Of a stretch of 64,000 nt of DNA, positions 14,942 to 57,090 are shown piece after piece. The stretch is from Heteronotia binoei (taxonomy: Eukaryota). Position 1 is the stretch's first letter; each line of letters begins with the position of its first letter. A program made the position numbers and the translations under genes. The stretch covers positions 6,944,001 through 7,008,000 of the forward strand of contig NC_083241.1 of the NCBI RefSeq assembly GCF_032191835.1. Direction: 5' to 3'. The notes under the pieces were generated by a model. The model saw nothing but the letters and a program-made list of their open reading frames with translations, did not search any database and was not told the origin of the DNA.

Positions 14942-15127
14942 NNNNNNNNNNNNNNNNNNNNNNNNNNNNNNNNNNNNNNNNNNNNNNNNNNNNNNNNNNN
15001 NNNNNNNNNNNNNNNNNNNNNNNNNNNNNNNNNNNNNNNNNNNNNNNNNNNNNNNNNNNNNNNNNNNNNNNNNNNNNNNNNNNNNNNNNNNNNNNNNNNN
15101 NNNNNNNNNNNNNNNNNNNNNNNNNNN
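14942..15127. other. Assembly gap (186 N)
   Basis: Run of N. Confidence 1.
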
Positions 15128-35749: not shown

Positions 35750-36700
35750 CAGGAGGTGGCGGCGGCTACAAGCATAGCCAGCTTCAAGAGGGGGTTAGAT
35801 AAAAATATGGAGCAGAGGTACATCAGTGGCTATTAGCCACAGTGTGTATGTGTGTGTGTGTATAAATTTTTGGCCACTGTGTGATAGAGTGTTGGACTGG
35901 AGGGGCCATTGGCCTGATCCAACAGGGCTTCTCTTATGTTCTTATGTGACACAGAGTGTTGGACTGGATGGGCCACTGGCCTGATCCAACATGGCTTCTC
36001 TTATGTTCTTCTGTGACACAGAGTGTTGGACTGGATGGGCCATTGGCCTGATCCAACATGGCTTCTCTTATGTGACACAGAGTGTTGGACTGGAGGGGCC
36101 ACTGGCCTGATCCAACATGGCTTCTCTTATGTGACACAGAGTGTTGGACTGGAGGGGCCACTGGGCTGATCCAACATGGCTTCTCTTATGTGACACAGAG
36201 TGTTGGACTGGAGGGGCCACTGGCCTGATCCAACATGGCTTCTCTTATGTGACACAGAGTGTTGGACTGGAGGGGCCACTGGCCTGATCCAACATGGCTT
36301 CTCATGTTCTTATGTGACAGAGTGTTGGACTGGATGGCCATTGGCCTGATCCAACATGGCTTCTCTTATGTGACACAGTGTTGGACTGGATGGGCCATCA
36401 GCCTGATCCAACATGGCTTCTCTTAGGTTCTTATGTGACACAGAGTGTTGGACTGGATGGACCCCTGGCCTGATCCAACATGGCTTCTCTTATGTTCTTA
36501 TGTAACACAGAGTGTTGGACTGGATGGACCCCTGGCCTGATCCAACATGGCTTCTCTTATGTTCTTATGTGACACAGAGTGTTGGACTGGATGGGCCACT
36601 GGCCTGATCCAACATGGCTTCTCTTCTGTTCTTATGTGACACAGAGTGTTGGACTGGATGGGCTATTGGCCTGATCCAACATGGCTTCTCTTATGTTCTT
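35750..36700 (+). repeat. CR1 3' fragment ending in a 13-unit tandem array of its terminal 56-67 bp
   Basis: Unit GTGACACAGAGTGTTGGACTGGA(T/G)GGGCCA(C/T)TGGCCTGATCCAACATGGCTTCTCTTAT(GTTCTTAT), spanning 35880-36700. Confidence 0.95.
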
Positions 36701-36949
36701 AGTAGGCTGTGAAGGTGTTTCTGTGGTACTTGTGGTGGCACAACCATCAGCGAGAATAGGGTTATCAGTAGTAGGTGTGAGGGAACAAGGAGCCGCCTGC
36801 TCGATATAGTGAACTGCGGAGGTGTCACTGGGTGTGTGATAACTCGTGTTAGAAGCGTTGTCTAAACAGCAGGTTATGCCAAACTTGGCCTGAGGTGTGC
36901 CACAACCCCCCGCAACATCTACGGTGAGGGCCTGTGACAGACACACCAC

Positions 36950-37950
36950 CCGAACGAGGGGTCTTGAATTTATCATCCCGCGCAGTCCCTCTCTGACCAA
37001 TCAAAAGAGACGATTCCTGCCCTCCCCCACATTTCGCTACGCCGCGGGCTGAGGCGACTGGGGGAGGGGGGGCTGCAGCGCGAGAGAGCCTTTCGTCATT
37101 GCGAGGGAGGGGGCGCGAGGAGGAGGAGGAGCACGAGAGAAAGAGCAGCCAATCAGAAGGAGAGCCAGCTTGTGGCTCGCGCTAGCCAGCTGCTTTAACT
37201 AAAGGCCTTTAAAAAAAACACACACACACACAACCACGACGGTTGGGGTGCGGACAACGGGCGGGGGAGTTTAAAAAAAAAAACAACAACCAGGGGAGAA
37301 AGTCGACGAACCAATCGCCGCCCGACAGAAGCGAGCCAGAGCGGCCAATAGGGTGGAGGGGAAAGACGAGCCAATGGGAGAGAGCCGCGGGCGCAGGCGC
37401 GGAGCGCGACGGCGAGCGCGCGCGCGCCGGAAAGGCGCGCCCTCTTCTCCCCCCCGTCCCCTCCCTCCCTCGCTGCAGCAGAAGCGGCTGAGGGCGGCCA
37501 TTTTGTGCGGCTGAGGGCGGCCATTTTGCGCTGCTGGGTAGGGGCGGCGGATGGGGGGAGGGGACGAGGCTTCGCTCAGAGACGGTGAAGACGGGCAGAG
37601 GCTTCCCTTCCCTCACGCACACGGCGCAAGATGGCCGGGGAGGCAGCAGCTCGCCGCCCGTGCTCCCCGGACGCACCTCCGCCTTCACCTCCCTCCCGAC
37701 GCCCCTCGCAGAAACCCGCCCGGCCTGAGGCTGCTCGGGGGCTTCGGCCGGGCCCGGGGAGGGTCTCCGGTCCTCCTCGGGGCGGGAAGGGAACGAAACG
37801 CGCCCGGGGGGTCGTTCGGGGCTCTCCCCCCCGCGGCCCCGCGCCCTTCCCCGGGTCGGGGTTCGAGTTCGGCGCGGCCGCCGCTCCTCGGCTTCGGACG
37901 GTGAGTCTCTCTCGCCCCTTTCTGCCGCCCTCCGTGTTCTCTCCCCGCCA
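36950..37950 (+). promoter_or_regulatory. CpG-island promoter of the CHASERR-like lncRNA
   Basis: Very high GC/CpG; CCAAT at 36997, 37149, 37311, 37345 and 37371; NRF1-like GCGCAGGCGC at 37391; YY1-like GGCGGCCATTTTG at 37493 and 37516, AAGATGGCCG at 37628. Confidence 0.9.
37450..37900 (+). ncRNA. CHASERR: CHASERR-like exon 1 (TSS inferred)
   Basis: Donor ACG|GTGAGT at 37900/37901 at the edge of the CpG island. Confidence 0.75.
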
Positions 37951-38284
37951 TTGTCTCTTTGTCCTTGGCCAGGGAAACGAGATGTCCTTGGAGGGGAAGG
38001 AGGGAGGGGGGGGGGGGGGACCTGAGCTCTCTCTCCCCAAAAAACGGCCCTGCTTTTTATTCCCAGGAAGGAAAGATCCGCCTCGACCTCGTTTTCTTTA
38101 CTGGGGGGCGGGTGGGGAGCCTCTGTTCGAGTTTGGGCTGCATGGAGAACTTTCTGGGTGTGTTTTTGGGGGGGGGGTGGGGAGGAGGGGGTTGGTGTCT
38201 GGCAGTCAAGTGGGGAGAAAGGAGCACCCCCCCCACCACCCACCCAGTTCTTCTCGTTCCTTTTTTTGTTACGTGGAAAGAAAA

Positions 38285-39370
38285 GCCCCCCACCCAAGAA
38301 AAAAAAACACCAAAAAAACCACTGGGTGGCTTCCTAAAGTCCGCATTTTGGGGGGAGGGAGAAGTCTTAACAGTCAAGTTGGGAGAGGGGGAAAAAAGCA
38401 GGGCTCGCCACCCTCACCCCAATTCCAAATTTTTCAAATTGCAGTGCTTCTCATTCCTTTTTTATTTTGTTTTTACCAGGGAAGGAGCTCCCCCCACCCC
38501 AAGAAAAAAAATAACGGGTGGCTTCCTAAAGTCCGCATTTTGGCGGGTGTGTGTGTTCAAATGTTGACGTTCAAGTTGGGAGAAAGAAGCAGGGGCTCCC
38601 CACCCCCCAATTCCAAATTTTCAAATTGCAGTGCTTCTCATTCCTTATTTTTTTATTTTGTTTTACCAGGAAAGGAGCTTCCCCCACCCCAAGAAAAAAA
38701 ATGGGTGGCTTCTTAAAGTCCGCATTTTGGCGGGTGTGTGTTCAAATGTTGACATTCAAGTTGGGAGAAAGAAGCAGGGGCTCCCCACCCCCCAATTCCA
38801 AATTTTCAAATTGCAGTGCTTCTCATTCCTTATTTATTTTTTTTTTTACCAGGAAAGGAGCTTCCCCCACCCCAAGAAAAAAACAATGGGTGGCTTCCTA
38901 AAGTCCGCATTTTGGCGGGTGTGTGTTCAAATGTTGACATTCAAGTTGGGAGAAAGAAGCAGGGGCTCCCCACCCCCCAATTCCAAATTTTCAAATTGCA
39001 GTGCTTCTCATTCCTTATTTATTTTTTTTACCAGGAAAGGAGCTTCCCACACCCCAAGAAAAAAAATGGGTGGCTTCTTAAAGTCCGCATTTTGGCGGGT
39101 GTGTGTTCAAATGTGACATTCAAGTTGGGAGAAAGAAGCAGGGGCTCCCCACCCCCCAATTCCAAATTTTCAAATTGCAGTGCTTCTCATTCCTTCTTCT
39201 TCTTTTTTTTAACCAGGAAAGGAGCTCCCCCCACCCCAAGAAAAAAACAATGGGTGGCTTCCTAAACTCCGCATTTTGGCGGGTGTGTGTTCATATCTGA
39301 CATTCAAGTTGGGAGAAAGAAGCAGGGTCCCCCCCTCACCCCAAGAAAAACACACACAAAGAACGGGTGG
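38285..39370. repeat. ~185-bp tandem repeat, ~5.5-6 copies, in intron 1
   Basis: GGGTGGCTTC(C/T)TAAA recurs at ~38324, 38517, 38703, 38888, 39068 and 39252. Confidence 0.9.
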
Positions 39371-42289
39371 CTTACCATTCCGCATTGGGGGGGTGCGGCC
39401 AGTGAAAAACAGGACCCAATCCTGAGTGGGGGAGATGGAGAATTGCAGGGTTGCTCGCACCCTTTTTACGTGGGGCTTGAGGGGTATCCTAAAGCTTGGA
39501 CGCGGTGGGGGTGCCCCAGATTTGGGTTGGGGGGTGGCGGTGGCGAGTAGGGGGCACTTGACAAAAGGACAGAGCCTTGGAGGTGGCTAAAAATGGATTC
39601 CAGCACCCCCCCCCAAAAAAAAACCCCCACACAGTTAAAACATTGCCTCCCCCGTTAGAAGAGTTCCCCAATAGGTATGGGGCGGGGGTACTAAGCAAGG
39701 ACTCCTGGTTGTAGGAGGCGAACATAACGTTGAAGGATATTGATGTCGAGCCCCAGCCGCCATTGGAACTGCAGTTCTTCTTCTCCCCCCTCCCCGTCTT
39801 TTGCAGCACTATTGGGGGGGAGAGCTTATGACACCCCCATCATATAGGATACTTTTCCCCTAATGGAGACCCAAAGATTTGAGTGTGGGCTTTCTGTAAA
39901 CACTTTACTAGGTTGGATTCTGAAGAGCTGGCAGTATTTTTTTTTTCAAATTCCAATGCAGTATTTTTGTATGGGGCAAAATAAGGTGGGGATCTGCAAG
40001 TTGAGACAGCACCCCCCCCCCAAAAAAAAATTCATGGAGAGAAATGAAGGTATGCCGATTCCTTATACATCTGTCAAAGTCCTGAATACTTTAATGGGTG
40101 GTGATGGTTCTCTCTTGCAGCTGAAGGGGAGAAACAACCATGTCTACTTTTTTGTAAGAACAAAAGACGCCATTCTCTCTGTCTCAGATATAAAAAACTT
40201 GGGTTTTGTATGTAGGGTGTTGGCTTTTAACGCCTTCTAAACCAGTTATAGAGAAGTGAACTACAGGAAAAAAAGTTGATAGAGCATTCTTTTTAAATAA
40301 AAGAATCTCTAAAAATGAATTTTGGAGTGCATTTTAACCAGAAAGGGTGGATAATGTGTTGTATTTTGGGACTTCAGATTAATTATTTGCTATGAACTTC
40401 TTTAAATACACAAACATTTTGTGTATTCCAGTTAAACAATTGAATGCACTTCTATATTGGAATAGGAATCCATGGTAAAAGGAATTGCAGTTTTAAAAAT
40501 GGGCTGCACTGACTTTAAAATAACTACGTAGAACTAAGGGCATTTTTAAAGCGTTACTGTCAGTTTTTGTATTAGGCATTTTGATTGTGAGATAAATTTG
40601 GTATTCAGTCTTCTAAGAATGCCTTGAATTTGTAAGAAAACTTGAGATGGAATCTTTGGCACTTGTTTTTCCCTTGGTTTGTTGAAGTTAGCAAGTTTGA
40701 CATTCAGAGTAATTTTCAGATGCCTAGACTTTGCAAGGTACGTCTTTAACTGGCATTTCTGAGATTAAGGCATAGTCATATTTGTGCAGTAGATTGACCT
40801 AACTAATTAGTCCAAATTCTAAAATTTTCATTTTCCTTCTGGGGTTTTGGACCATGAGTGACATGAGGAGTGTACTGTTGAAGAAAGTTCTAGCACAGAA
40901 CTGACTTCTGCTATATTTTTAGCCATGCTGGCAAATTTATTTTTCAAAGGCTTTAGACCTTATTGGCTGTGTAATTAGTTGAAACCAATACTGGTCTTGC
41001 AGAAAACACCATTGTAGGAGTAGTTACTTAAAAGGATTAGTATTATTCTTATCAGTTTGAGTTTTAAATGCTTTGAGCATGGACTTCGATTTATTCTTAA
41101 CAAGATGGAAATATTAACTTGGTTAAAGCCTGTTGGGAGTAAAGTTAACTAACCAACTTGTACTCTAGTGTAAGAAAATAGGACTGAAATCAGTGTAACA
41201 CTACCTTCTGTTATATGTGTAACTGGTTCTAATATTGGCTTCAAAATGTATCCATTGTGTGATCTGTGCCATGTTTTCTGTAATGAGACAGTGAAACTAA
41301 GATACATTGATGGAAAAGCTTATAGTGTCTTGTGTATGGCTGGAAACAATTTTTTTGAAAAAATGCTTAATTTAGAAATATAGTTAGCATTATTTTTCTC
41401 TTACTAATGCTTATTAAAGTTCACCACTTTGTAAATACTGAACATTTTTAAATAATTTTTTTATTTAGGTATTCGTTGAATGCTTATCCCTGCGATAACT
41501 GATGGCTTTCGGATGAACTATAGAATCTGTTCCCAATAGGTGAGAATAATTTCAAACTCATGTTAGTGTATTGTTTGCCTCTAGCTTGTGACCAAGGTGT
41601 CATCCATTTTATACAGTTTTCCTGAATAAGAGGAACACTATATCCCCTGTTCAAACTAAATGCAAACTGATTATTCATAATTTAGTTTATTGCTAAATTT
41701 ATATTTTTTAAAGAAAACTAATATGCTCATTATAAATATATTTGGGGAAAAAATCCTATTGATTTTTGTGGAACATATTTCTGCACTAAATAACTTACGT
41801 TAGACTCCTAAGCTGAGTTGTGCCTTTCTTAGCCCATTGATGTAATTGGAAGGGTGTAATTATTTTTAGGATGGGTCACTGTCACAGGCAGCTATTGTGA
41901 ATGTATTAAATAAGCCTAAAGAAAGGGGGAATTGCTTCCAAATAAATCTTTTTGATCAGGATGTTCATGTGTGAATGTTTTTTTTAAAAAAAAACCTCAA
42001 GCTGGGAAATAAGGAGGTAGGCAGACTTAAGTATGCTCTGTAACTTTTAGAAAGTTACATCATGCTTGCATAAATGTCTACACAGGGAGTTAAGGACTAG
42101 GGACTTGTTCATACTCTTGTAAATAGCTTTTGTAGCTAAACACCTGCTAACTTCCTTGGGTTTAGATAGTTCGTTTTAAATGTGTAACTGATATGAAGCT
42201 GAATTGTAGCTCAAAATTACCATTAACACCCTTTTTCTTAAAAAAGGTGACATAGATTTTTGAAATAAACCCATGTTTTCTTTTTAAAG

Positions 42290-42366
42290 ATTGCTTTGGG
42301 TTCTGCCCACTGGGCATTCCTTATGGTGGTAGAAGAGGAAATGCAGAATCCTGTAAACTAATTCAG
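42290..42366 (+). ncRNA. CHASERR: CHASERR-like internal exon (77 nt)
   Basis: Acceptor TTTTCTTTTTAAAG, donor CAG|GTACGT. Confidence 0.7.
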
Positions 42367-43511
42367 GTACGTTTCACTTCTAGTCAACTCCGTGGATACC
42401 ACAGGTGCAGTTACGGTCTCCTTCGTCACAGCCCATAAGCTTTTAATAGAATCTCAGTTTCCATTTATAATTGAAGAGGTCCTATTTCTGGTGCATTAAT
42501 CTGAACACTTTGCCAGCCCTTGCTTTTATGTATTAAGTGAGTAGGAGTGTGCCAGTATTCTTTTAGCGTTAGAAGTAAGACTAGCTGAACAAAAAGTAAC
42601 GTTTAGTGTTCAGCACTTGCGCCCAATTTGACTTTTATATATTAGCTCAGTACTTATACCCCAGGGCTTTAAGGAGGGTTGAATGTGGGAGGCTGAAACT
42701 GAGAGATGGGGGCTTATCTTAAGTCCAAGGCCACCACAGTGCTCCTGTTTGAATTGAGATGTTACAAAGAGACTTCCAGTTTATGCCTCATATTCTAAAC
42801 CATTGTTCTTGTCCCAGATCTATGAAGGGCATCTTCAGAGTGTTTTTTTCTATTTGTGTTATCAGTGTTATCACACTGCAGTCCTGATGTTCCCTTTGGT
42901 CTTATGTTCTTTCCTGTTTAATTCAAGACTGTAATTGAAGAGTTGGAATGTGCCACCTTAATATGTTACGTAGTATGAATATCAAATGGAACGGATGTGC
43001 TTCGCATGGAATGCACAATTTGGATTCCAAGTCTTAAGTGGATTCAAAATCAACAAACCTCTTTTTACAGTTTAGCAACTTGGTGAAAACCATCAGTATT
43101 TGTTTGAACCTATAGCAAAACACTCTTTCTTTGCTCAGAAATAACTTTGCTAGGAGTATGTTGGAATTTACTAGCACCTGGTTTTAATACATGTTACCAC
43201 TTAATGTAAGTAAAGGTCAGTTTCTCTTTGCTTATGTCAGAAATTTTGTCAATATGTACAGCACATCTTGTATACACTGAATACTTGAGAGAATTCACCT
43301 AACTTGCAGCGTTGTCAAGTAAATAATTTGATGGTATGATAACTTACACAAAGCTAGCGAAAGACATCATTTCATAAAATGGAGGCTAAGAATTGAGACC
43401 CATTGAAAAAAAAATCGGTTATTGTTTTGGGAATACTTTTGTCCTGTACATGAATGACTTCAGAACTAAGTTCTAAGTACATTTGCTTGGAAGTAAATCT
43501 TCACATTATTT

Positions 43512-43734
43512 AGAGCAAGAGAGTCCAGTAGCACTTTAAAGACTAACAAAATTTGTGACAGGGTATAAGCGCTCGTGAGCCTCTGCTCACTTTTCAGACA
43601 GTATCTGATGGTGTCTGAAGAAATGAGCAGCTACTTGTGGAAGTTCATGCCCTACCGCAAATTTTGTTAGTGGTGCTGCTGGACTCTGGCTCGTTTTCAG
43701 CTGCTACGGACTAACAGCTACTTGTCTTGATCTA
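43512..43734. mobile_element. Penelope-like element remnant, inverted pair of terminal repeats
   Basis: 43512-43599 and 43613-43700 are imperfect reverse complements of the reptile PLE-type tail (GAGTCCAGTAGCAC...GACTAACAAAATTTG). Confidence 0.6.
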
Positions 43735-45176
43735 TGTAGAAGTTCACTGAAATCCTATGAGTTATGTACTCTTACGCCTAGTGGCTTTGGCAAAGGTGTA
43801 ATTCTGCATAGGATTGCGCTGTTAGTCTTCCTGTTTAATCTAAGATGATGACATGATAGGGTATGAGTACCATTGATAATTAGTCTTGCAAATGTAAGTG
43901 TTTCTGCTAGTTGAGGTTAGATTTTTATGTTTTCCTTGCTCAAAAATGGTTAAACTTCTACTTTTAAAATGCAGCTTGCATTCCTTACACCCTTCCTAGT
44001 GCGTATTATAGTGCCGGAGAGCAATGTTACAAGACTGGGTAGACTGGTTTTCTGCTGAGTTGGAATCATGGAAATTGCAGAAAACTTTGGTCTTTGAACA
44101 AATTCCTTTATAATTGTAGTTCACGGTAGGATTCTACCTTCCTGCAGTACCTGACAAACCCTTGAAAAATGCCTGGATTTAGGAACCTGACCAAAGTGTA
44201 AAGCGCTGTTACGTGTAATTCAGCAATTAAATAGCATCCAGGAATTTAGGTGAAGAGCAAATTATTAGTTTATGAAATCAGACATTGTGCTTATGTCAGT
44301 GGGACTCCTGGCAATCATTTGAAATCAACAAAATTTTGAGTTTTATTTCTACATAAAATGCTTTAATTTACCTGGGCATGTGGTATTGGTACCCTGTTTT
44401 AGTAATAATACTACTTTCTCCAGAATGGTGTTAACAAGATCCTAGTGCCTGTAGCTTCCTTTTTGGTAAGGTTCTACTTTAACATATATGTGGCTGTATC
44501 AAAGAGAGTAGCCACTTAATAAGGTTAAAAAGATCATACTAAAATGTATTCAGTCTATCATTATGCTTTATCTACTAGTTCAGTTTCTGCTCTTGAAGAG
44601 TAAAACTTGAATCATAACGCAACTACTTTAAAATGTCAGTCGAAGTTGCAGTTTTGTGTCTTTACCTGTAAGTCCCATGAAAATTCCTTCCTGAACATCC
44701 TTCAGGAACAGCATGCTCTGGATCAGGAGTGTGTCATGTTTGATGTAGATTGCAATGGGAACCCCACCTGTTCAGCAAGCCCAGTGTGGTTTTTGGCATG
44801 CTGCTGAATTATACATTCGCTGACTCTTGGCAACATACTGAATCCGGAAGTAATAGATATGCTAATATAAGCGTTGCTTTGAGAGTTGCATGTTGGGAAA
44901 GAAATTCAGGAAATGTAGGTTTTAAGAGGACTGTAATATGTTGGCCACAGATGACACTGGCTCAGTCATTGGTTGAGAGTATCCAATATATATGTATCTA
45001 AAATAAACCAGACTGTGTTATTTAATATGAACAACCTAAAACATGAGGCTAGGATCTGCATACTTAAAATCATGAACAAGTTTTGTTACTAGGTTCCTAA
45101 GGTATTTTGTATTTGGTTAAAATGACTGGCCTGTTGGAAGATTGTGTTGGGAGTAGACAGTGAGTCCCTATTAAGA

Positions 45177-45516
45177 CAGGGCTCCCCCACCTTTTAAGCT
45201 TTGTGAGCACCTTTGGAATTCTCACATGATGTGGTGGATGCAGCCACAGAATGGCTGCTGCAGGAAATGGAGCCAGCCACAAAACAATTGCCTCAGCTTA
45301 ACTTCAGGCCCACAGTGAATATCCTTGATCTATGATGGCAGTTGCTGCCGCACCAGCTCCTTTAAAATTTACACAGCAAGTCAGATCTCCGGTAGCCAAC
45401 CAGAAGCCAAAACTGAACCTGGCCCCGCCTACTTCTAAAAAACCCCCACTTGATGGGTGCCAGAAAAGATCTGTGTGGCCACCATGGTACACAAGGACAA
45501 ATTATTGGGGACCCCT
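45177..45516. mobile_element. Old Charlie-type MITE
   Basis: CAGGGCTCCCCCACC start, TTGGGGACCCCT end; internal similarity to 15727-15940. Confidence 0.5.
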
Positions 45517-46152
45517 ATTTTAGGAATTAGGTTAAATAGTAAGAGGTTTGGCTTTCATTCCTGAGTTTAGGAAGAATTTCAGGACAAGCTGTATCTGTTT
45601 AAGTACACTCTGAAGTACATTTTTAATGGGCTGTTTTAGCTCTAGATGATGGCAAACTATTTGATGACACACCAGTTTATCTAGGGTTGCACTTTTCTTT
45701 ACAGCAAAGCATATTTGTTTTTAAGAAGAGGATGATTAAAAATGGAAGCAGTATAACTAAGAGCAATTGGCTCTCAGCAGTCTAATGCTGCATCAATAGA
45801 ATGGAGATGATTCTAATGATTTGCTTCCAGGAAAATTAGGGCTTGAAATATTCTCTTGCTAGTCAAGAGCACTTATAACAGAAGATACGTTTCCAGGCCC
45901 TAGATTATTATGTCGGTTATAAACTGATAGCATCAGAGAATTTTAGATTATGTTTTCTGAATGATTAAAATCATTATGCTTGGCTCATAATGCAAATGAC
46001 AATTGATATCAAATTTAGACTGCATTCTTGAATGTAACTAAATCAAAATTGTTGAAAACATCAGCTTATTTGAGTTAACATCCATAAACATGACTGTCCT
46101 AATGGTGAATTTAAGTTGACTCATTTAATAGCATATTAAACTTTTCCTACAG

Positions 46153-46204
46153 ATAACATTGATGGATTGAATGTATTTCATACCTGATGCAGGCTGAAGC
46201 ACTG
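46153..46204 (+). ncRNA. CHASERR: CHASERR-like internal exon (52 nt)
   Basis: Acceptor CTTTTCCTACAG, donor CTG|GTAAGT; stops in all three frames. Confidence 0.7.
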
Positions 46205-48915
46205 GTAAGTTATTGTCTTAGTATGTTTGCATGTGACTTGTGTGTTTCCGTAAATGTACGTGTTGCAATTCTTTTCACTGAGCAAGTCTCCAGAAGTAAA
46301 AGATGTAGATTCAATTTAAAAATATTTGCAGTTAGCCATTCATTCAGGATAATTTTAGTAGAATTAAATCACAAAGCTTTGCTTGGATTAAAGTATTCCA
46401 GGCTCCAATTAGGCAAATCACGTGTGTGAATACTTCTGAAGTTCTCTGTTTACATTCAGTGGGTTAGAGAGAAGGGCTGAACAGGGACTCTTCTTTGTAT
46501 GTGTTAGTTTTATATGTGTGGCAAAGTTTAGTACGGGGAGCATTCATACATGTGATTTCTCCCACTTGCAGCCTGGAAGTAGCTTGGTTCACTTGGTTCT
46601 GCTGACGTGTATAAGCCAAGAGATTTGTAGCAGTTCAGGTATGCATTAATTTAACACAGAGGTTGTAATCCACTTTCTACTTAAGAGGAATGCTAAAGTT
46701 GTTGATGAGAGGTCTGTCCAAAATTATTCAGGATTAAGTAGCTAAACTAGTTAGCATAATCAACCAGCCTATTATCTCATGGAACAGGAAGCAGGTATAT
46801 TAATATAAACCTCCACAAATTTTCTGTGGATCTAAAAGCCAGGCCAGGGGTCCAGCTCATTTAGGAACCAGGGTTTCATATTTTAATGGCTGCTTTCTAA
46901 TTATTTCTGCCATAAAAACAGATCCCAACCTCTTCACTACAGTGTTGAAGTGCATAAATATGTGGGTTAATCATAGTTGTCACCACAAAGAGTTAGCTAT
47001 CCCTAGCCAAACTTCTCTCCAGTTTTTCATAATTCCAGTGTAGAAAGCAACTGGTTAAGAACTGAATTCACTCACCACCACTGAATAGTGTAAATTTAAG
47101 TTTGTGTGTACACGGCCAAGGACAAGAACTTCATACTCCTGTTTCTATCATATGACTAAATGTTCTGATGTGAATTGACAAGTAAGCTTTGGGTTGAATT
47201 TGGCCATCTTTTTGGTTTGATCTTGGCCAATTCCTCATGTTATTATGGGTCCTATTCTACATGGGTTCTGATCGTATGGGTCTTCTGGCCCCAAATAGCC
47301 TTTTTAGTGGCCAGAGAGAACACTTTCCTTTGTTCACCATTGAAGAAACAGATTGAGTTCAGCCCTTTGTAATTCTACTGAGAATTGCTGAGACACTACA
47401 ATGGACTCATGGTTGAAAATGCTATGCACCACAGTGACATTTGTAGGTGGCATGGAGACTTGTCATATGGGATTTGTCAAGCTCTGTATTAACACTGTTT
47501 CTTAAGATGTATGAAGTCCAGAGTTCTCAAACGATCTCTTAAAAAAAAAAAAGTCAAGAGTACTTTTTGTACCTTTTGCAAATAACAGATGTAAACATTT
47601 CATGGTAACTGGTATGCCACTTTATAAAAGAAGGGTGATGTGAATATAATGTTTATATAAAGTTCATGCTTTGCTTCCTTTATCATTTCCTCTGGTCTAA
47701 GGTTTCTAATTTATTTATTACTTCACATTTATATCCCGCCCTCTCTGCAAGCGGACTCAGGGCGGATTCTTAAGATGTATGGAGTCCAGAGTTCTCAAAC
47801 GATTTTAATAGTATACTACTTTTTTTAATAGTATACTAGTGTTCTAGAGTATAACAGTTTCCAAATATGTGAAGGTATGTTGTTACATCTGGAGATGTGG
47901 TGAAACATTTTTTCAAATGAAATTGATTCTACTTCTCAAAATTGGGCTTATGGTTGCAGAACACAAGCAGTGCCTTGTGCGAGATAGTTACTTTAAATAG
48001 TATGGCATGGGGCTTGCCTCTTATGGCCATTCGTCCACATGGAGAGATCACTCCAAGGTGAAGCCTAGTGTTTTCGTAACTCTCCCAAGCCCATATGTAG
48101 ATCACTCTGTTCCTAGGCTCCTTGGAGTTGCGCTGAACCAAACAGCTCTGGTGTGATTTTGTTAAAAGAGTGTGCATAGAAGTAGGTCTTGATGTTGTCT
48201 GTCTTAATGGCAGCATTCAGGCTTTCGTTACATCTTTCTAAACTTGCCCTGTGTGGCATTTATTAAAGCTCACCCTTTCCTCTATGCATTATAGACCTCA
48301 ATTCCAGCATCTGAAGATAATGTTGGTGTTTAGCATATTACTGTCTTAAATGTGTTTATTTAAACAATCCATTTGTTTTGATGGTCCATTGATTTCAGCG
48401 AAGTAAAGTCACTCAACAGAAGTTGCAGGTTCAAAGTGTAAAATGCTTTCTGACTTGAATATTGTTCTATTCTATCAAAGGACTTTTATGTTACCAAACG
48501 TTACACAGAACTGTGACCTTGATCCAGAAAAGAAGGAATCTTGTGACAATGAAAATAACTCATTTATTGTGTCACAATAAAATCTCCCAGTTTTTAAGGT
48601 GTCACAAGACTCCTTTTTGTTCTTGCTACACTAGTGTAACACTGTTCCCTCTCTGAAGTTTTTATCCAATAAACCAAAACTCTACATGGCCCCTTTATCC
48701 AATAAGAATGGCATGTTCCAGTAATATTCTTTCTAGACCAGCAGGCTTCAAACTTTCTACCTTAAGGAACATCCTTTGTACATTGTGTCTGAGAGAAATT
48801 CCTTTGATCGCCAGTGGATTCTAGGACATGTTCTAGGGGTAAAGCTCACATAAAGTACTAGCCAGGCCTATGGAGTCTCATAATTGCCTACATTAACTAA
48901 AAGCATGTCATAGAA

Positions 48916-49484
48916 CAGGGGTGTCAAACTCATTTGTTATGAGGGTCAGATCTGACATAAATGAGACCATGTCGGACTGGGGCATGTCAGGCCGGGCCAT
49001 GTGCGTATCTATTTAAGATTTGGTAGAGATAAATTTTATTTAAAAACCCCCAAAAGTTAAAACATGCTTAAAATGTTAGCACTCATTGGTCTTAAAAATG
49101 CTTTCTTTGTATTTCTCCCATGGGGACAAGGGAACTGGGCAAAGGAAGCTCTGGCTCTTTCCTTCCTTTCCCAGGGCACTGGGGGGGGGGGGTGGAGGAG
49201 CCTCAGCCAATAGAAGGAAGAGAGGCTTGGCTCAGTAGCTCTGTTGGGCAATTGAGAGAGCCTGGCAAAGCAAGCTATTCCTCCCCAAGGGAGGAGCCTC
49301 AGCCAATGGAGAAAATAGAGGTTTTGCTCTGTAGCTCCTTTGCAGTTGAGCAAACCTTGCAAAGCAAACTGTTACGCAGAAGGAAGCAAGATATAGGAAG
49401 CAGATGACAGCCAGTTGCTCAGGGGCATGATAGAAGCCCTCCGGGGTCTGATTTAGCCCCCGAACTGCATGTTTGACACCCCTG
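48916..49484 (-). mobile_element. Charlie-type MITE (same family as 9672-10283)
   Basis: CAGGGGTGTCAAAC / GTTTGACACCCCTG, perfect 14-bp TIR. Confidence 0.85.
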
Positions 49485-50468
49485 TGAACATTCCTTATGC
49501 TTTTCTTTGACTGGTAGGGTTAGCTCTAGAAAACTGTCTGCTAAAGAAAATCTGTGGTTAACTCCTCTTAAAATAGAACCCCAGCTTTTAAGAAACTCAG
49601 GGTTCCTACGACATCATTGGAAAACACAGCTCTAAGTCATCCTGTCCCTTTATTTAGAATGTTTATATGCCACTTCTTCAGAGTCCTTTGAAGTGGCTTT
49701 ATTGCTTGTGCTCCTTACTTTGTTGGCTCGTGGATCTTCCTGCTTCTAACCAGCACAAAAACTGCATCTCTTGAGACGCCACATGTGTGCTCTGTATTGT
49801 AGCCTTCTCCTTTGTGTCAGTATTCTATATTTAACTCGGTCCAACAGCAGCATTTGATAATCCCATATTAATTACTATAGCATTAGTACCAGGGATAGGA
49901 ATTGAAACTGAACCTTGAATTTTCCTCAAAGAAAATTGCAAATTTCTTAACAGGTACTAATCATGCTGCTTACAACTTAAGAGTCATCAGCTTCCTAATA
50001 GGAATCAAAAGAACTGTGGCTGAGGTGTAGTTTATTGTGGAAAACTGAATTATGCTAGTTAGCTTCCTAAAATTATCTGATCACCTGCAGTTTTTCACAA
50101 ATGATCAATTAAAATGCTGCTTTGCTTGTTTTCCAACCTTCACTTTCACTTAATTCTGTAGCACATAGGTCACCAATGTGTTGCGTGTGAGCTCCATGGT
50201 GCCCATCAATACCTTTCCTGGTGCCTGCCAGGTGTTTTCAGAAAAAGGGTGGGGCTGTTGCCCAGCATGGCTTCCTAATTGGGTACTGCAGATCAGATTG
50301 GCTCTGCGGATTAAAATAACATTGATTCACCAGCAACTGCTACTATGGTGTTGGTTTTATTCCATCTCTCTCTCTCTTTCCCAGTGTAGTGTTTGAATTA
50401 CCCCTCTTCCCTGCTCTTTTCTCTGGGGGTGTGCATGGCTGTACCTCTGTCGGCAGCCATGGTAAAAA

Positions 50469-50790
50469 CAGAACATAAAAACATAAGAGAAGCCATGTTG
50501 GATCAGGTCAATGGCCCATCCAGTCCAGTACACTGTGTCACACAGTGGCCAAAAAACCAGGTGCCATCAGTGGGGCCAGGACACTGGAAGCCCTCTCATT
50601 GTGCCCCCCCCCCCCCCAGCACCAAGAATACAGAGCATCATTGCCCCAGACAGAGTTCCAACAATACGCTGTGGCTAATAGCCACTGATGGACCTCTGCT
50701 CCATATGTTTATCCAATCCCCTCTTGAAACTGTCTATGCTGGCAGCTATCACCGCCTCCTGTGGCAGTGCATTCCATGTGTTGATCACCC
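50469..50790 (-). mobile_element. CR1 3' fragment
   Basis: Reverse complement of the CR1 tail and of the WNxLPQEA..AS sequence. Confidence 0.85.
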
Positions 50791-53592
50791 TTTGAGTGTC
50801 ACGGTGCCCACCACCCTGCATCAGAATTCCAAAGGTGTCTACACGTTTTAAAAGGTTGGGGACCCCTGGTATTGCCCATTATTAAATGCACCTTGGTTGA
50901 TTTCTCCAGGTAGCATTCTTTTGAGAGAAGAGGATGGGATTATAATACATAAAATCTAAGTGCCCGTATATTTCTAAAACTAGTTTTTCTTCTCTGGGAA
51001 CTTAGTTTGTATTCAAAATGAGAGCTGCCCTCTGTTCTTCACTTTAAGCACAACTCATGGGGATAACTAAAAATGAACAAAGGTCTCTTAGAGAGGCTCT
51101 GAAGTACTTATCCCTTTGCTTCTTGCAATTGAACTAATTGAGCCACAGCAAGGTCTCTAAAAAGAGCCTGCATCTGTTTCTAAAGATGTTCAATATTATA
51201 TGGTACATCTTTTCCCCCTGTATAATTCCTTTTGATAGTTCCATGTTGGGGAACTAACTGTTATCTGCTTGCTTCTGTTTGTTTTTCCCATAAAGTGATG
51301 GCATATGTTCAGTGCTTCATTGTGTTTATGTAGGAAACTTAGATTCGACAATTACGGTTTTCACTATGAGCTTCCGACATTGTCCTGCACATGCCACCAG
51401 TTTGCTATACTTCAAGAAAGAAGTTGAATGGAGTACAACTATTTTTTTGCTCTGGGATTGTAGAGTTTTTTTGTTTTGCTTTAGAAGACCAAGGACTCAT
51501 AAGTAGATCAGCACAAAGTTCCAGTGAAATGGCTGTTGGTTTAGATTTGTTTGGGTTTTCTTTAATAACTAAACCACTTTAATTGCTGTTTGGTTTTTGG
51601 AATTGCCAAATAGGGTGTAGACTTTCAAAACTGAATTTCAACAATATTTGGGTTGCCGTTCAAGTAAACTTAGTAGCCTTTCTTCATTTTTCTTGACCAG
51701 CCATGGTAACCAGCAGTTGGTGAACTTTCTTTCGCTGGATGATGATTATTGGCTGGATTTATGTTTTTTTATTAGTGAAATGACTGCTTTGAAATAATTC
51801 AAGAACTTCTGAAAGCTCCTACAGTATATGGAGAAGGGGATTTGGAAGAAGTATGATAAGGAACCTAAAATATACATACTAGAAGAAACAGTCACTTAAG
51901 TGCAGAGACCAAGTAGTTAACAACATAAGGATATAATCTGTAGATACTTTTCTTATGAGCCATTCATAGACAAGAGCCATTCCTGCCCTTAAGCCTAATT
52001 GCTTAATTCTTACTTATGGCTGCATTACAGCAGTCTGACTGTGGCTTCTTGATGCAACAACATGGTGGAACATGTTGTGATAGGGAGTAAATTGAAAGAC
52101 ACCTTCTAAATAGACATATTCTGTAATCCACCTTGAGTCTTCAGGAGAAAGGCGGGCTACAAATAAAGCACTGAGATAAATGTTTACGAGCTTAAGTGAT
52201 CACATAGATTTTTCCCACCCTGACTCTGCCCACTTCAATGACTGAGTTCTTTGTACCTTTCAAAGGCTCGTTATAGATCAGGTGGTTATAGATCAGCTCC
52301 CAGTTGGGTTTTCAAGTTGCAGCTGAAGTAACTAACTTTGTGACCTTTCCAGTTATTCTTAGTCACCTTTCCAGTTAATTAACCCAGTTTGTAGCCTTGT
52401 GAGAAGAATCTGCTAATTTCATAAATTGGCTTAGAATTGAAGTTTTCTTGATCATGAAGTGTCATGGGACATGATCGCCTAAGCACTTCTTAAAAATTCT
52501 GTTGTATTAGCTAAAAATCCCAAAAATCTTTCTTATATATTCCATGGAGTACCATATTTGGCTTTGCCTCAGCAGTTGGGTACTGTCCTTTAAAATTATA
52601 GGCTCACCTATTTAGATTGATGGGTGCAATTAAGGACTGTGTGGGAATGAGGAGGGGGGCAGGTGTCAGAGGGGTTTGACCAGAACACCCATTTGCTTTG
52701 TTTTGATTGTCCACATGAATTGAAACTGAGGTTACATCTTTGCTCAGATAATGAGAAATGCATTGGAAGGGGTGCAAAAGTACCGGCAACTTCTAAGATT
52801 TCGCTGTGGATTACGTTAAACTACTGCAGGCATTGGAGTATCTTCTATTCTGCCATTTTGTTCTACGTTCATAGGAATCAGAACAAAGGAATTCCATTTT
52901 TCTTTAAATCTTGATGGCCAGAAATTAGGCTGAAACAAACTTCATACATAATATGAGCAGTCCCACTTTTACCAAATCTGTCCTCAGTTTCACCTGGTGT
53001 CTGTTTGCTGAAGGCTGAGAGTGCATTTTGACATTCTTTGAAATTCCCACTTGCATCCCATGTACTACTTCTGTCTATGTGGCTAGCCATAGAGTATTGC
53101 CTATGTGTGCTAGAGTTTTCTTAGACTGATTTGTAATTGCTCTTTATGTATTTGTATAGTGATATATTAATTTCATCAAGAACTCAATTTAGGAGTTTCC
53201 TCCTTTGCAGATACTAAAAAGACCTGCCAATAGTTTGTGGACAATGAACCCAAAGCAAATGGGGGTTCTGGTTTACAGTTTAACTGTAAATTGTGATTTT
53301 AAAAATTGTGGCTAAAGCTAACCTTTTTATGTGTCTTCAGTGGTGGTTCAAAGTAGAATTTTTATATTAAAGGCATAAATTCTCAATATTCCCTATAGTG
53401 ATTCTGAAAAATGGTTAATGGATTGGCCATGAATTATACGAAGTTTTGACCCATCTAATTTTGACATTACTTTACTCCTTTAAAACATGTTGAATTCATT
53501 CAGATGTGACAATTCAAAGTATTGGATGCTTAGTTTAAGGATAAAATCACATGTATTCCAACAGCATATTTCTTTTAATTTTTTTTATCAAG

Positions 53593-53955
53593 AGTCCAGA
53601 CAAAGGAAGAATCTCAAAGAGAGACTGCAAGAGTTCCAAATCAAGATGGCAGTTCCTACTGATTGAGAGGTTGAGAAAATGATCTAATGCATGGTTGCCG
53701 AGTATATCCATCCAAGACAGGGGCACTTTAGAATGGACTACGCTGTTTTCTAAACCAAAGAAGACTGGGCCTTATGGTCATCTTACAAATGATTTTTTAA
53801 AAATTAAACGTTTTAAGTCTTGTATCAATGCAAACTTGTTTGGGGAGATGGAAGTGGCTTACTCAATTCTGGTACCATACATGTTTGACTCCTGTCTGTT
53901 GGCAGAAGCGCAATTCAATCTCAAATTATTTAAATAAAAGGTTTTTTTACATTTT
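53593..53955 (+). ncRNA. CHASERR: CHASERR-like terminal exon
   Basis: Acceptor TTTTTTTATCAAG; AAGATGG at 53643; ATGG at 53646, 53691, 53733, 53774 and 53848; poly(A) signal at 53933. Confidence 0.8.
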
Positions 53956-53975: not shown

Positions 53976-56039
53976 CGGACTGAATGATTATCATTGTATC
54001 AGTATCTTCTGTTGGTGGTTTTGACAGAAGAAATGTGAGGATTATATTCTTGGTTGGGGTTGTGTTTTGTGTGCTCTCTGGCTAGTTACACAAATATTTT
54101 CATATTTGATGGGTTACATGTCTGCCTGACTTGAAATGGTGGTAGCTATTAAGACAAAATATTTCCAAACTGGTGCAGCAATTTTACAATGGTACAAATC
54201 AAATGGTTTCAGTGGAAATAATACCACACAACACCTTGTGGTTTGAAGTCTTCTGTTGATGTTCTAGAGTTTACCAGATATTCACATAACCTACAAATGG
54301 AACCCATTCCTTTTCAACATTCCTTTTAATTAGATTGACTTTCTTACTGGTTCATTGAGCTCCTTTTGTGAACATACTGCCATGAAATAATTTGGGCCTG
54401 GTAACTCTAATAATTCTTACCAATGTATTGAATGGGTTGCTGTTTGTACAGATGTTCATGAAATCCATGAGCCTATTTTACTGATGTCCATGTTACTGTT
54501 TAAAATGATGAGGTTGCGCTTTTGTCTCTCTTTGCCTGTGTAAACACCATTAAAGAATCATAGGTATTTTCTTGAGTTGTTTTGCCATTGAATGTCTGAA
54601 ATGCCAAGCAGCTACTTGGCCAACCAATGTAGGTTGATGGTCACATTGTTTTTGGACAGGAGATCCAGTTTGCTATTGAAGTAGTAATGTGAAGGATTAC
54701 TGAGGGAAAAGCAGACAGAAGTTTACTTGAGGCCATGTTGCTGTTGGAATGATGTTGGCGTTCATTGATTTGTGTATTCGTGGTTTTGGAGATTATTACC
54801 CACCTGCTCACTCCTAACAAATACCCTTTGTTGATGGCATAAAATGGTGACTTGGGTCTAGACAAAGCACCTGAGGTTTGGGCTAGTGGTATACTTTGGA
54901 TGTGGAATTCTTCCAGAAGTACTACCATCTGTGGTGCCCCCTAATTTGGACATCTAGAGCCTATACCCAAGAGGTGCCCTTGTTGCTTGTAGCTCCTATT
55001 TGATTCTTAAACTAGGCAACTCTTGACTGACTTTGAAAATGGGTATTGTAGATTGCGTGTGGGCTGGAAGAATGTGGCCAAATACAACAGATTATGGCTT
55101 GTACTGGTAGAGCCTTTGTTACAAGGTACTGTGTGTCTTTGGATCGAACTCTCATCTACATGAGTCCATGTGGACTCTAAATGCATTAAGAATGCAATGG
55201 GATCATGGTGAACTTCCTCAGATCTAGGTATTGGGCATGCTCAGCAGTGAGGTACTAGATGCACTTCTTTCCCATGGAGTTCTGGATTGTTGGACCATCA
55301 TCACTGTTGCTCAGAAAAAAACTGTTGGAAATGGAATACAGCTAAAATATGGACCCTTATGGAGTCTTTCTTATTGAATATCTAAGATCTGCCATATTAA
55401 GAAAATGGACATGACAACACAATGGATTCGATTTTTACAGCCGCTTCAGTAACTAATGAATTGGATTTTCAATTGCCCCATTTGTTGCTTCCAAGTGGAG
55501 CCACTAGGGAGGCGCTATGGAGATTGGCAGGGTTAGTAGCTAGTTCTTTTTCACTGGAATGACTGCTCTAAGGGGCATGTTTATGGCCAGTTTTCCCACA
55601 GTGGCTATTAAACAAGAAGATACTTCCTCATTTTTCTGAGAATTACCCCATTGGGTGGTGGGCTTGCCTACCCATGTGGAGTACTGGGGGTAACCCAATG
55701 GACCCCAGTCTGGACTTCCACTGCTTCAAAATGGCTTGCTGCATCACCACTTCCTGTCCAGGGAGGAAGTAATTTTAGCCCAAGGACAGAAATATGCCAG
55801 CCCTCTACAACAAAAGAAGCCAATAATCTCTTTCTGGCTTGGAAAGGGTGTCTGAACCAGATGGGGTTAAGTTGCCCCCTCCACAAATTGGGGTAGTCTG
55901 AGATGCCCAGGGTTGGGGGGCCCCTTCCCTTTAGGTGGAGGCTCCCTTTCTGGGTTTTTTTGGGTGGAAATGAAGGGGTGGGTCTATGGTACATCACCTG
56001 AGTTGTGGGGTAAATGTAGAGAGTGTCAATCAAAGGCAG

Positions 56040-56587
56040 AGCTCAGAGCTGGGAAGAAAGCTCTAGATGGCGGCTGTGCCTTGGAGAGCGCGCTGAGCCT
56101 CCCTGCCTTTTTTCTCCCCCTCCTCCACCACTTTTGCGCAACTTTCCCCAACTTTTGGGCAGTCTCAAGGGGCTCTGGCGGCCCCTGGCCTCTCGTGGGT
56201 GCCGGCGTGGGGGAGAGCGAGCGTTTTTGGGGCAGAAAAGCAGCTTCGGGGGGCTCTTTTCCCCTCGCCTTGTTGGAAAGAAGCAGCCCAGGTCGTTGTT
56301 TTTCCCAGCTTGGAAGCCATGGCGCACCTCCATTTTTGTGCGCTCGCCTAATGAGCTTTTCCTCCGGATCTTTTCCTTTCGCTTTAATGATCGCCTCTGG
56401 CGATTAAACGACGGCGGATCTTTTGGGATTAAACCTTTATTTGTTAGATTTTTAGGGGGGAATAATGTTTTTTTAAAAAATAACAACGACTCCCGGTCCG
56501 TCTGCCTTGGGAAACATTTTGGAGCTGATGTTTCCCCACTACCCGAAACTAATATCGGGTAGGACCTGGCGCGGGTGCCCTGATCAG
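56040..56587 (+). other. CHD2: CHD2 exon 1 (5' UTR; start approximate)
   Basis: Blocks such as CTCAGAGCTGGGAAG, GCCTTGTTGGAAAGAAGCAGC and CCCAGGTCGTTGTTTTT match the recalled human CHD2 5' UTR; donor GATCAG|GTAGGT at 56587/56588. Confidence 0.8.
56319..56351 (+). promoter_or_regulatory. Upstream ORF in the CHD2 5' UTR (MAHLHFCALA*)
   Basis: GCCATGG Kozak context, 10 codons, ends TAA TGA. Confidence 0.7.
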
Positions 56588-57028
56588 GTAGGTGGGCGAT
56601 TATTAACCATCGTTTTTGAGATTTTTGTCCTTTTTTTCGGAGTACTTTGAATTTTATTTTGTCGTCGACCGATTTGAACGATCCTGAATGACGCAATAAA
56701 ATACCTAGAATATTTGCCTCCACGGTTACTTCGGGAAAGTTTGCACAGTGTCCCGCAGGGCTGTGGACCCTCTTTTTAAATTTTTTTCGGGGGGGAAATG
56801 TAGTATTTAATTATCGATTTCCCCCCTTTGCTTTTGTGAGCCTTCTGCATTATTGGAAGCATTGCAACGTCAGGACTTTTTGTTGTTCGTCGTCGTGAAA
56901 AGCCAAAGGCAGCGAGTGGGACTTTACCTTTCTTTCAACTTTTGACAGTAAATACCTGGGCACGGGACTTCAAAGCAGACCCAAGCGCTCATTTGCCTTG
57001 CTCTTAATATTTTTTTAAGAATTAAAAG

Positions 57029-57090
57029 ATGATGAGAAACAGGGACAAAAGCCACGGAGAGGAGGGTTCTGGCCACAGCAATGCATCGAG
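57029..57090 (+). CDS. CHD2: Chromodomain-helicase-DNA-binding protein 2, first coding exon (exon 56949-57090; 62 coding nt)
   Basis: MMRNRDKSHGEEGSGHSNAS+AG versus recalled human [21 protein letters not shown]; acceptor TTTGACAG|TAAATACCTGGGCAC and donor GAG|GTATGA; missed by the ORF track because it is short. Confidence 0.93.

What the first reader, a model, noticed from the sequence alone, without database searches (positions are those of the whole stretch)
37450..53955. Squamate ortholog of CHASERR, the cis-repressor lncRNA of CHD2, reconstructable from sequence
Seen: a CpG promoter, three canonical splice junctions, a poly(A)-signal exon, and then CHD2 exons 1-2 about 2.1 kb downstream on the same strand. 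Established: in mammals CHASERR (LINC01578) sits in this arrangement and restrains CHD2 dosage in cis. Inference: this is the reptile ortholog. The ORF track cannot see it, and it is likely missing or poorly annotated in this genome.
Basis: partly seen in the sequence, partly recalled or inferred. Interest (0 to 1): 0.85.

Follow-up and report, generated by a model that had tools for sequence, protein, structure and literature searches.

The report
Lizard CHASERR lncRNA upstream of CHD2
This is a real, spliced five-exon non-coding RNA gene just upstream of CHD2, the reptile counterpart of mammalian CHASERR, but a lizard CHASERR is already published, so it is a correct annotation rather than a discovery.

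Summary
RNA reads show GT..AG splicing on the + strand: 42366->46153 directly, and 46204->53593 through 28 reads whose overhang equals window 53593-53622.

Exon 42290-42366 is joined instead to an overlooked 71-nt exon, 41469-41539. That gives five exons and about 1.0 kb, the published CHASERR architecture.

The terminal exon holds a 15-nt block identical to mouse Chaserr exon 5 (AAATCAAGATGGCAG, chance 0.01) and a second gapped match. RRAUGG-type motifs are enriched and AATAAA lies at 53933.

Exon 1 sits in a CpG island. It carries the mammalian TISU-like start CAAGATGGCCGG and a 99-codon ORF that ends in exon 2, as in mouse. The CHD2 start-codon exon (MMRNRDK...) is at 57020-57090, with its CpG island about 2.1 kb past the poly(A) signal.

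Not shown: the exon 1 donor and start site, the poly(A) site, and any effect on CHD2.

Rom et al. 2019 (Fig. 1a) and Ross et al. 2021 (Table S1) already include a lizard CHASERR. Verdict: already known, low interest.

The parts
37000..38000 (.). CpG island: promoter and first exon of the lncRNA
   Evidence: GC 0.64-0.71 and CpG observed/expected 0.89-0.98. Three + strand CCAAT boxes lie at 37311, 37345 and 37371.
37450..37900 (+). Exon 1. The 5' end is uncertain, somewhere in 37440-37625. The donor at 37900 is inferred.
   Evidence: GACG|GTGAGT is the best donor in 37450-38600 (10.2 bits against 7.2). The exon ends in G, as the start of the X1 spliced contig at 41468 requires. No reads were laid here.
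37627..37638 (+). TISU-like start context CAAGATGGCCGG of the exon-1 ORF (ATG at 37631)
   Evidence: 11 of 12 bases match the mammalian CHASERR ORF start CAATAUGGCCGG quoted in 10.1101/2025.05.28.656657. The ORF begins MAGEAAA, like the human TGCB peptide AGEAAAPR.
41469..41539 (+). It holds the ORF stop TAA at 41496-41498.
   Evidence: GT..AG joint 41539->42290 in X1 and X2 contigs and in 7+3 raw reads. The X1 spliced contig starts at 41468. The acceptor reads tttttttatttag|.
42290..42366 (+). Exon 3 (77 nt)
   Evidence: Joints on both sides. The splice sites are read.
46153..46204 (+). Exon 4 (52 nt)
   Evidence: Joint 42366->46153 in 12+5 raw reads and contigs. A loose end behind 46204 in 28 reads leads to 53593.
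46572..46638 (+). Minor alternative cassette exon. The 3' end is inferred.
   Evidence: GT..AG joint 46204->46572 in 2+3 raw reads. The donor TTCAG|GTATGC scores 8.2 bits.
53593..53951 (+). Exon 5, the terminal exon. The 3' end is inferred.
   Evidence: The acceptor at 53593 is used by 28 reads. RNA-library contigs hold 0.79, 0.38 and 0.29 of its sampled words. It resembles mouse Chaserr exon 5.
53638..53691 (+). Motif-containing region: AAATCAAGATGGCAG, then TTGAGAAAATGATCTAATGCA
   Evidence: The 15-mer is identical to mouse exon 5 (expected 0.01). A gapped pattern that fits both mouse and the window matches once (expected 0.00). RRATGG occurs 3 times against 0.64 expected (P about 0.026) and ARATGR 4 times against 0.93 (P about 0.008).
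53933..53938 (+). AATAAA poly(A) signal
   Evidence: Sequence only. CA at 53950-53951 and a T/GT-rich downstream stretch follow. No 3'-end reads.
56000..56587 (+). CHD2 CpG-island promoter and putative non-coding exon 1 (donor at 56587)
   Evidence: CpG observed/expected is 0.72-1.14 over 56000-57000. GATCAG|GTAGGT scores 10.1 bits. Not tested with reads.
57020..57090 (+). CHD2 first coding exon (ATG at 57029)
   Evidence: It translates to MMRNRDKSHGEEGSGHSNAS. Its likeness to the human CHD2 N-terminus rests on my own knowledge. The exon is flanked by ...tttttttaag| and |gtatga.

Best explanation
Window 37.4-54.0 kb (+ strand) is the CHASERR orthologue of this reptile.

Shown: it is a CpG-island-driven, spliced, five-exon RNA of about 1.0 kb whose last exon lies about 2.1 kb upstream of the CHD2 CpG island on the same strand.

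Inferred from mouse and human work: transcription and termination of this RNA just upstream of the CHD2 promoter restrain CHD2 output in cis. This would form part of a negative feedback loop in which CHD2 protein acts at regions downstream of termination sites.

Also inferred: the RRAUGG/AARAUGR motifs at the start of the last exon promote recognition of that exon (splicing coupled to cleavage and polyadenylation), which prevents read-through CHASERR-CHD2 fusion transcripts. The ORF that starts in exon 1 and stops in exon 2 makes the RNA a likely target of nonsense-mediated decay, as in mouse.
For: Splicing on the + strand:
- GT..AG joints 41539->42290 and 42366->46153 appear in raw RNA reads of two samples and in RNA-library contigs of two runs. 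In the raw reads the introns are almost empty.
- 28 reads link 46204 to 53593.

Homology to Chaserr:
- Window 53638-53652 is identical to a 15-mer of mouse Chaserr exon 5. It lies 46-50 nt from the exon start in both species.
- A second block at 53671-53691 fits a pattern written to match mouse.
- Further collinear similarity is visible by eye between the sequences printed.

Motifs and signals:
- RRATGG, ARATGR and AARATGR are enriched.
- AATAAA lies at 53933.

Exon 1 and the ORF:
- G/C 0.75 and a CpG island.
- CAAGATGGCCGG against the mammalian CAATAUGGCCGG.
- A 99-codon ORF ends in exon 2. Mouse has a 117-codon ORF that ends in exon 2 (Rom 2019).

Architecture and position:
- Five exons and about 1.0 kb match the 'typical five-exon isoform, ~1.1 kb'.
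- The CHD2 start-codon exon and CpG island lie downstream on the same strand. The spacing is close to the mouse ~2.2 kb.
Against: - The exon 1 to exon 2 junction, the start site and the poly(A) site were not observed.
- The raw libraries are unstranded, so the strand rests on splice-site orientation.
- The two contig runs (X1, X2) also cover the introns evenly, so they hold DNA or pre-RNA. Their 'holding' the last exon does not prove expression.
- The comparison with known CHASERR used only the mouse exon-5 fragment and short quoted motifs. No alignment to the published lizard, chicken or human sequences was possible.
- CHD2 identity rests on 20 N-terminal residues recalled from memory.
- Cis-repression is entirely inferred from mammals.
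Confidence: 0.88

Rival explanations
1. The exons are not an independent lncRNA. They would be alternative upstream 5'-UTR exons of CHD2, from a distal CHD2 promoter, and the 'terminal exon' would be a minor dead end.
For: CHASERR-CHD2 fusion transcripts exist naturally in mouse, human and zebrafish.
Against: 28 X16 reads leaving exon 4 agree at 0.98 on the sequence of 53593 onward, not on CHD2 exon 2. The exon has AATAAA and is homologous to the mouse terminal exon. CHD2 has its own CpG island and a strong exon-1 donor.
Confidence: 0.04
2. The transcript is mainly, or also, a microprotein gene. The exon-1 ORF would be the orthologue of the proposed human TGCB peptide, and that peptide would be the selected product.
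For: The start context is TISU-like and the first seven residues, MAGEAAA, equal the human TGCB N-terminus (peptide AGEAAAPR).
Against: No protein in 5.8 billion resembles the 90 exon-1 residues and no Pfam family matches. The sequence is Pro/Arg/Gly-rich, as any G/C-rich DNA would translate. ORF length varies widely (41 aa in human, 101 in pig, 117 in mouse, 99 here). Rom 2019 calls the mouse ORF non-conserved. The shared start may reflect a DNA or initiation element rather than a peptide.
Confidence: 0.1
3. It is an unrelated, lineage-specific spliced transcript that happens to lie upstream of CHD2.
For: Position-conserved lncRNAs without sequence homology are common. The internal exons could not be compared with any orthologue.
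Against: An exact 15-mer and a second 18-base gapped match to mouse Chaserr exon 5 occur at the same offset and in the same order. The exon number, the ORF layout and the start motif are also the same.
Confidence: 0.02

Closest known systems
Mouse Chaserr (1810026B05Rik) / human CHASERR (LINC01578), Rom et al. 2019, PMC6841665
   Same: Tandem, same-strand position about 2 kb upstream of the CHD2 start site. Five exons, about 1 kb. G/C-rich CpG-island first exon. An ORF that starts in exon 1 and ends in exon 2. A last exon of a few hundred nt with AAGAUGG near its start and AAUAAA at its end.
   Different: Only short blocks of the last exon are visibly alike. ASO1's full 20-nt target and ASO3's 18-nt target are not found within 3 mismatches. 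The ORF is 99 codons, against 117 in mouse and 41 in human. Function is untested here.
Lizard CHASERR as shown in Rom et al. 2019 Fig. 1a (RNA-seq SRP009831) and curated in Ross et al. 2021 LncLOOM (PMC7798263, Table S1)
   Same: The same gene in a squamate. The published definition (less than 2 kb or so from the CHD2 start site, five exons, AAGAUG in the last exon, a poly(A) signal) is met here.
   Different: I could not obtain that sequence, so identity or divergence is unknown. The species of this window is coded in the run tables and was not established.
Other tandem upstream lncRNA / coding-gene pairs that act by transcriptional interference or promoter competition (for example PVT1-MYC, cited in Rom 2019)
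   Same: A non-coding transcription unit next to a dosage-sensitive regulator that acts in cis.
   Different: CHASERR is defined by its specific last-exon motif region and its CHD2 feedback. No homology to those loci exists.

Membership tests
CHASERR (CHD2 adjacent, suppressive regulatory RNA) | Lies immediately upstream of CHD2 on the same strand, with its 3' end about 2 kb or less from the CHD2 start site | tested here: met
   Poly(A) signal at 53933. CHD2 CpG island from about 56.0 kb. ATG exon at 57020-57090 on the + strand. The gap is about 2.1 kb. The exact CHD2 start site is not mapped.
CHASERR (CHD2 adjacent, suppressive regulatory RNA) | Characteristic five-exon architecture, about 0.6-1.3 kb mature RNA | tested here: met
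   Five exons and about 1010 nt. Three of the four junctions are supported by RNA reads. Exon 1->2 is inferred.
CHASERR (CHD2 adjacent, suppressive regulatory RNA) | [quoted passage not shown] | tested here: met
   Exon 1 GC is 0.75. CpG observed/expected is 0.89-0.98 over 37000-38000.
CHASERR (CHD2 adjacent, suppressive regulatory RNA) | AAGAUG / AARAUGR / RRAUGG motifs clustered at the start of the last exon (the motif-containing region) | tested here: met
   AAGATGG at +51 and AAAATGA at +84. RRATGG occurs 3 times (P about 0.026) and ARATGR 4 times (P about 0.008). The 15-mer around the first motif is identical to mouse.
CHASERR (CHD2 adjacent, suppressive regulatory RNA) | AAUAAA at the 3' end and a polyadenylated transcript independent of CHD2 | tested here: inconclusive
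   AATAAA is present at 53933, and reads from exon 4 go to this exon. No 3'-end or poly(A) reads were examined, and read-through was not examined.
CHASERR (CHD2 adjacent, suppressive regulatory RNA) | Exon-1 ORF with a TISU-like start (CAAUAUGGCCGG in mammals) that ends in exon 2 in mouse | tested here: met
   CAAGATGGCCGG at 37627. The 99-codon ORF stops at 41496-41498 in exon 2. This depends on the inferred 37900 donor.
CHASERR (CHD2 adjacent, suppressive regulatory RNA) | Significant sequence alignment to other amniote CHASERR RNAs | tested here: inconclusive
   Only the mouse exon-5 fragment printed in a supplement and quoted motifs were available. Two blocks match far beyond chance and two ASO targets do not. 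No full alignment was run.
CHASERR (CHD2 adjacent, suppressive regulatory RNA) | Represses CHD2 in cis | not testable with these tools
   This needs knock-down or deletion with allele-specific CHD2 measurement.

The most novel reading that the evidence does not exclude
The translated start of the CHASERR exon-1 ORF may be an ancient amniote feature under selection. The start context (CAAGATGGCCGG) and the first seven codons (MAGEAAA) are the same in this reptile and in human, and the ORF again runs from exon 1 into exon 2.

On this reading, translation of CHASERR itself is conserved, although the rest of the peptide is not. It might trigger nonsense-mediated decay and keep the RNA nuclear, or act as an upstream ORF in CHASERR-CHD2 fusion mRNAs. 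Published work describes the ORF as non-conserved (Rom 2019) or conserved across mammals only (the TGCB preprint).
Probability: 0.3. Interest if true: 0.4.

Novelty: already known. Interest (0 to 1): 0.15.

Why it matters
CHASERR is one of the best-conserved vertebrate lncRNAs and a therapeutic handle for CHD2 haploinsufficiency. A read-supported exon model in one more squamate adds a data point for motif-conservation analyses of the LncLOOM type and for genome annotation.

It changes no concept. The orthologue's existence in lizards, its architecture and its motifs are all published. The only mildly new point is that the ORF's start and first codons are shared with human.

Tried and rejected
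- Mouse ASO1 target (20 nt) and ASO3 target (18 nt) searched with up to 3 mismatches: no match. Only the core of each site is kept.
- Protein search with the 90 exon-1 ORF residues: no hit at E<=0.01. Pfam: none.
- Rfam on 36.5-57.5 kb: no family.
- Two scans of metagenome contigs, one for the motif-region pattern and one for the predicted exon 1/2 junction: nothing. This was expected for vertebrate RNA.
- Earlier notes of this scan: none on this place, and none mention CHASERR or CHD2.
- A short exon 1 ending at 37537 (CTGG|GTAGGG) was considered and set aside. It scores only 4.8 bits against 10.2 for 37900, and it would leave out the conserved ATG at 37631.
- A spliced divergent transcript from the two minus-strand CAAAATGGCCGCC elements: no good minus-strand donor within 900 nt. 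Not pursued.
- No further CHD2 coding exon was found in 57.1-64.0 kb.
- The second sequencing-run search was left unused.
Full report
**Observation**

The window has a sharp CpG island at 37.0-38.0 kb. GC is 0.64-0.71 and CpG observed/expected is 0.89-0.98, against 0-0.4 on either side.

Acceptors with pyrimidine tracts lie at 42290, 46153 and 53593, and GT donors follow 37900, 42366 and 46204. An AATAAA hexamer sits at 53933-53938.

Downstream on the same strand there is a second CpG island at 56.0-57.0 kb. An exon at 57020-57090 opens with ATG at 57029 and reads MMRNRDKSHGEEGSGHSNAS. From my own knowledge this resembles the N-terminus of human CHD2. No tool here could test so short a peptide.

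**RNA evidence**

The last exon is held by RNA-library contigs of three runs, at 0.79, 0.38 and 0.29 of its sampled words. Raw RNA-seq of the same species label was offered.

In the raw runs coverage is confined to the exons and to two dispersed repeats, so these are clean RNA libraries. The call showed four things.

- Joint 42366->46153 (GT..AG) appears in 12 and 5 raw reads and in contigs of both other runs.
- 28 reads of X16 run past 46204 into a 30-nt consensus (agreement 0.98). That consensus occurs once in the window, at 53593-53622. This confirms the third junction and the acceptor of the terminal exon.
- The acceptor at 42290 is joined to 41539, not to 37900. The joint is GT..AG and is seen in 7 and 3 raw reads and in one contig each in X1 and X2.
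- A minor joint 46204->46572 (5 reads) points to a cassette exon at 46572-46638.

The third point reveals a 71-nt exon, 41469-41539, behind a tttttttatttag acceptor. The X1 spliced contig begins at 41468 and ends at 42366. That is where spliced and unspliced paths would branch in an assembly graph.

The libraries are unstranded, so the + strand follows from the GT..AG orientation of every joint.

The X1 and X2 contigs also cover the introns evenly, at 1-2% divergence. They therefore contain DNA or pre-RNA of close relatives. Their share of words alone is no proof of expression.

**Gene model**

| Exon | Coordinates | Support |
|---|---|---|
| 1 | ~37450-37900 | 5' end uncertain, donor inferred |
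| 2 | 41469-41539 | reads |
| 3 | 42290-42366 | reads |
| 4 | 46153-46204 | reads |
| 5 | 53593-~53951 | acceptor by reads, 3' end inferred |

The exons sum to about 1010 nt.

The exon-1 donor at 37900 (GACG|GTGAGT) was not seen in reads. It is by far the best donor near the island, at 10.2 bits against 7.2 for the next. It also ends in G, as the start of the contig requires.

**What it is**

The literature defines CHASERR by the following features:

- tandem position about 2 kb or less upstream of the CHD2 start site;
- a five-exon isoform of about 1.1 kb;
- an extremely G/C-rich first exon;
- AAGAUG / AARAUGR / RRAUGG motifs at the start of the last exon;
- AAUAAA at the 3' end.

All of these are present here.

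The mouse exon-5 sequence is printed in the LncLOOM supplement. It shares the 15-mer AAATCAAGATGGCAG exactly with window 53638-53652 (one match, 0.01 expected). The 15-mer lies at nearly the same distance from the exon start in both species.

A pattern written to fit the mouse ASO2 region (TTGAG-AAAATG-NNN-TAATGCA) matches once, at 53671-53691, with 0.00 expected. By eye, further collinear blocks follow, for example CCAAGACAGG against CCAACACAGG, AATGGAC, and TACAAATG.

RRATGG occurs 3 times against 0.64 expected (P about 0.026). ARATGR occurs 4 times against 0.93 (P about 0.008).

Two full ASO targets do not match within three mismatches, as expected at this evolutionary distance.

In exon 1, CAAGATGGCCGG at 37627 matches the mammalian ORF start CAATAUGGCCGG in 11 of 12 bases. 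With the inferred donor, the ORF runs 90 codons in exon 1 and 9 in exon 2, with its stop at 41496-41498. [quoted passage not shown]

The ORF begins MAGEAAA. The human TGCB N-terminal peptide is AGEAAAPR. The rest is Pro/Arg/Gly-rich and has no relatives.

**How it most likely works**

What is shown is a spliced RNA that stops, or at least has its conserved terminal exon and poly(A) signal, about 2.1 kb upstream of the CHD2 CpG island.

What is inferred comes from mouse and human. Production of this RNA represses CHD2 in cis, through interference near the termination site and CHD2 feedback. The motif region secures definition of the last exon, so that transcription does not read through into a CHASERR-CHD2 fusion mRNA. 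None of this was tested in a reptile.

**Rivals**

- A distal CHD2 5' UTR. This is unlikely, because exon 4 reads go to the terminal exon at 0.98 agreement.
- A microprotein gene. This is possible as a second function, but the evidence is limited to the start.
- A chance lineage-specific transcript. The matches to mouse exclude it.

**Novelty**

Rom et al. 2019 show the lizard locus with RNA-seq in Fig. 1a. [quoted passage not shown] Ross et al. 2021 curated a lizard CHASERR among 16 species (Table S1). Literature searches found nothing further on reptiles.

The finding is therefore a correct re-identification with an improved exon model, not a discovery. Whether this genome's annotation lacks the gene could not be checked. 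The species is coded in the run tables. Other first-stage notes of the scan call the genome a lizard, which I did not verify.

**Limits**

- One read-laying run of 6 kb was available, so exon 1, the start site, the poly(A) site, CHD2 exon 1 and any fusion transcript remain untested.
- No vertebrate genome or transcript database was available for alignment.
- The assembly gap at 14942-15127 was left alone.

Noticed in passing
window 43520-43565: A roughly 45-nt piece in the intron between exons 3 and 4 has very high depth in all four RNA runs: summed contig depth 478 and 827 in the two contig runs, and 15-38 reads deep in the raw runs against about 0 beside it. Many reads have heterogeneous loose ends on both sides. 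It looks like a fragment of a dispersed repeat (SINE-like) that is present in many transcripts.
   Followed up: partly
window 38323-39334: Tandem repeat of a 185-nt (or 364-nt) unit, about 5.5 copies, 90-94% alike, in intron 1 just past the CpG island. It explains the long spurious ORFs on both strands there.
   Followed up: partly
window 37484-37536: A 23-nt unit is duplicated in tandem (2.3 copies), each copy carrying GGCGGCCATTTTG. On the minus strand this reads as the YY1/TISU-like CAAAATGGCCGCC. A mouse Chaserr qPCR primer also begins GCCATTTTG. This could mark a divergent start site or YY1 sites inside exon 1. No strong minus-strand donor lies nearby.
   Followed up: partly
window 37631-37651: The first seven codons of the exon-1 ORF (MAGEAAA) equal the N-terminus of the proposed human TGCB microprotein (peptide AGEAAAPR in 10.64898/2025.12.04.692433). 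Conservation outside mammals has not been reported in the papers I read.
   Followed up: partly
window 46572-46638: A minor alternative exon is joined to exon 4 in 5 raw reads. Its 3' border and its downstream partner were not seen.
   Followed up: partly
window 41250-47250 (runs X1, X2): The contigs of the 'metatranscriptomic' RNA libraries cover the introns evenly at depth about 10-13, with 1-2% differences from the window. They contain host DNA or pre-RNA from closely related animals.
   Followed up: no
window 2236-4976 (-) and 18339-18908 (+): Retroelement remnants. One is a LINE with endonuclease (PF03372/PF14529) and reverse transcriptase (PF00078) pieces. The other is an LTR-element RNase H fragment (PF17917).
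   Followed up: partly
window 36500-36701: A 67-nt unit repeated three times (94% alike) immediately upstream of the CpG island.
   Followed up: no
window 45233-45284: Another short repeated piece in the intron between exons 3 and 4, with raised RNA depth, loose ends, and a 'goes back 52' joint in one contig.
   Followed up: no
window 14942-15127: A run of 186 N (assembly gap or masked stretch). Left as it is.
   Followed up: no
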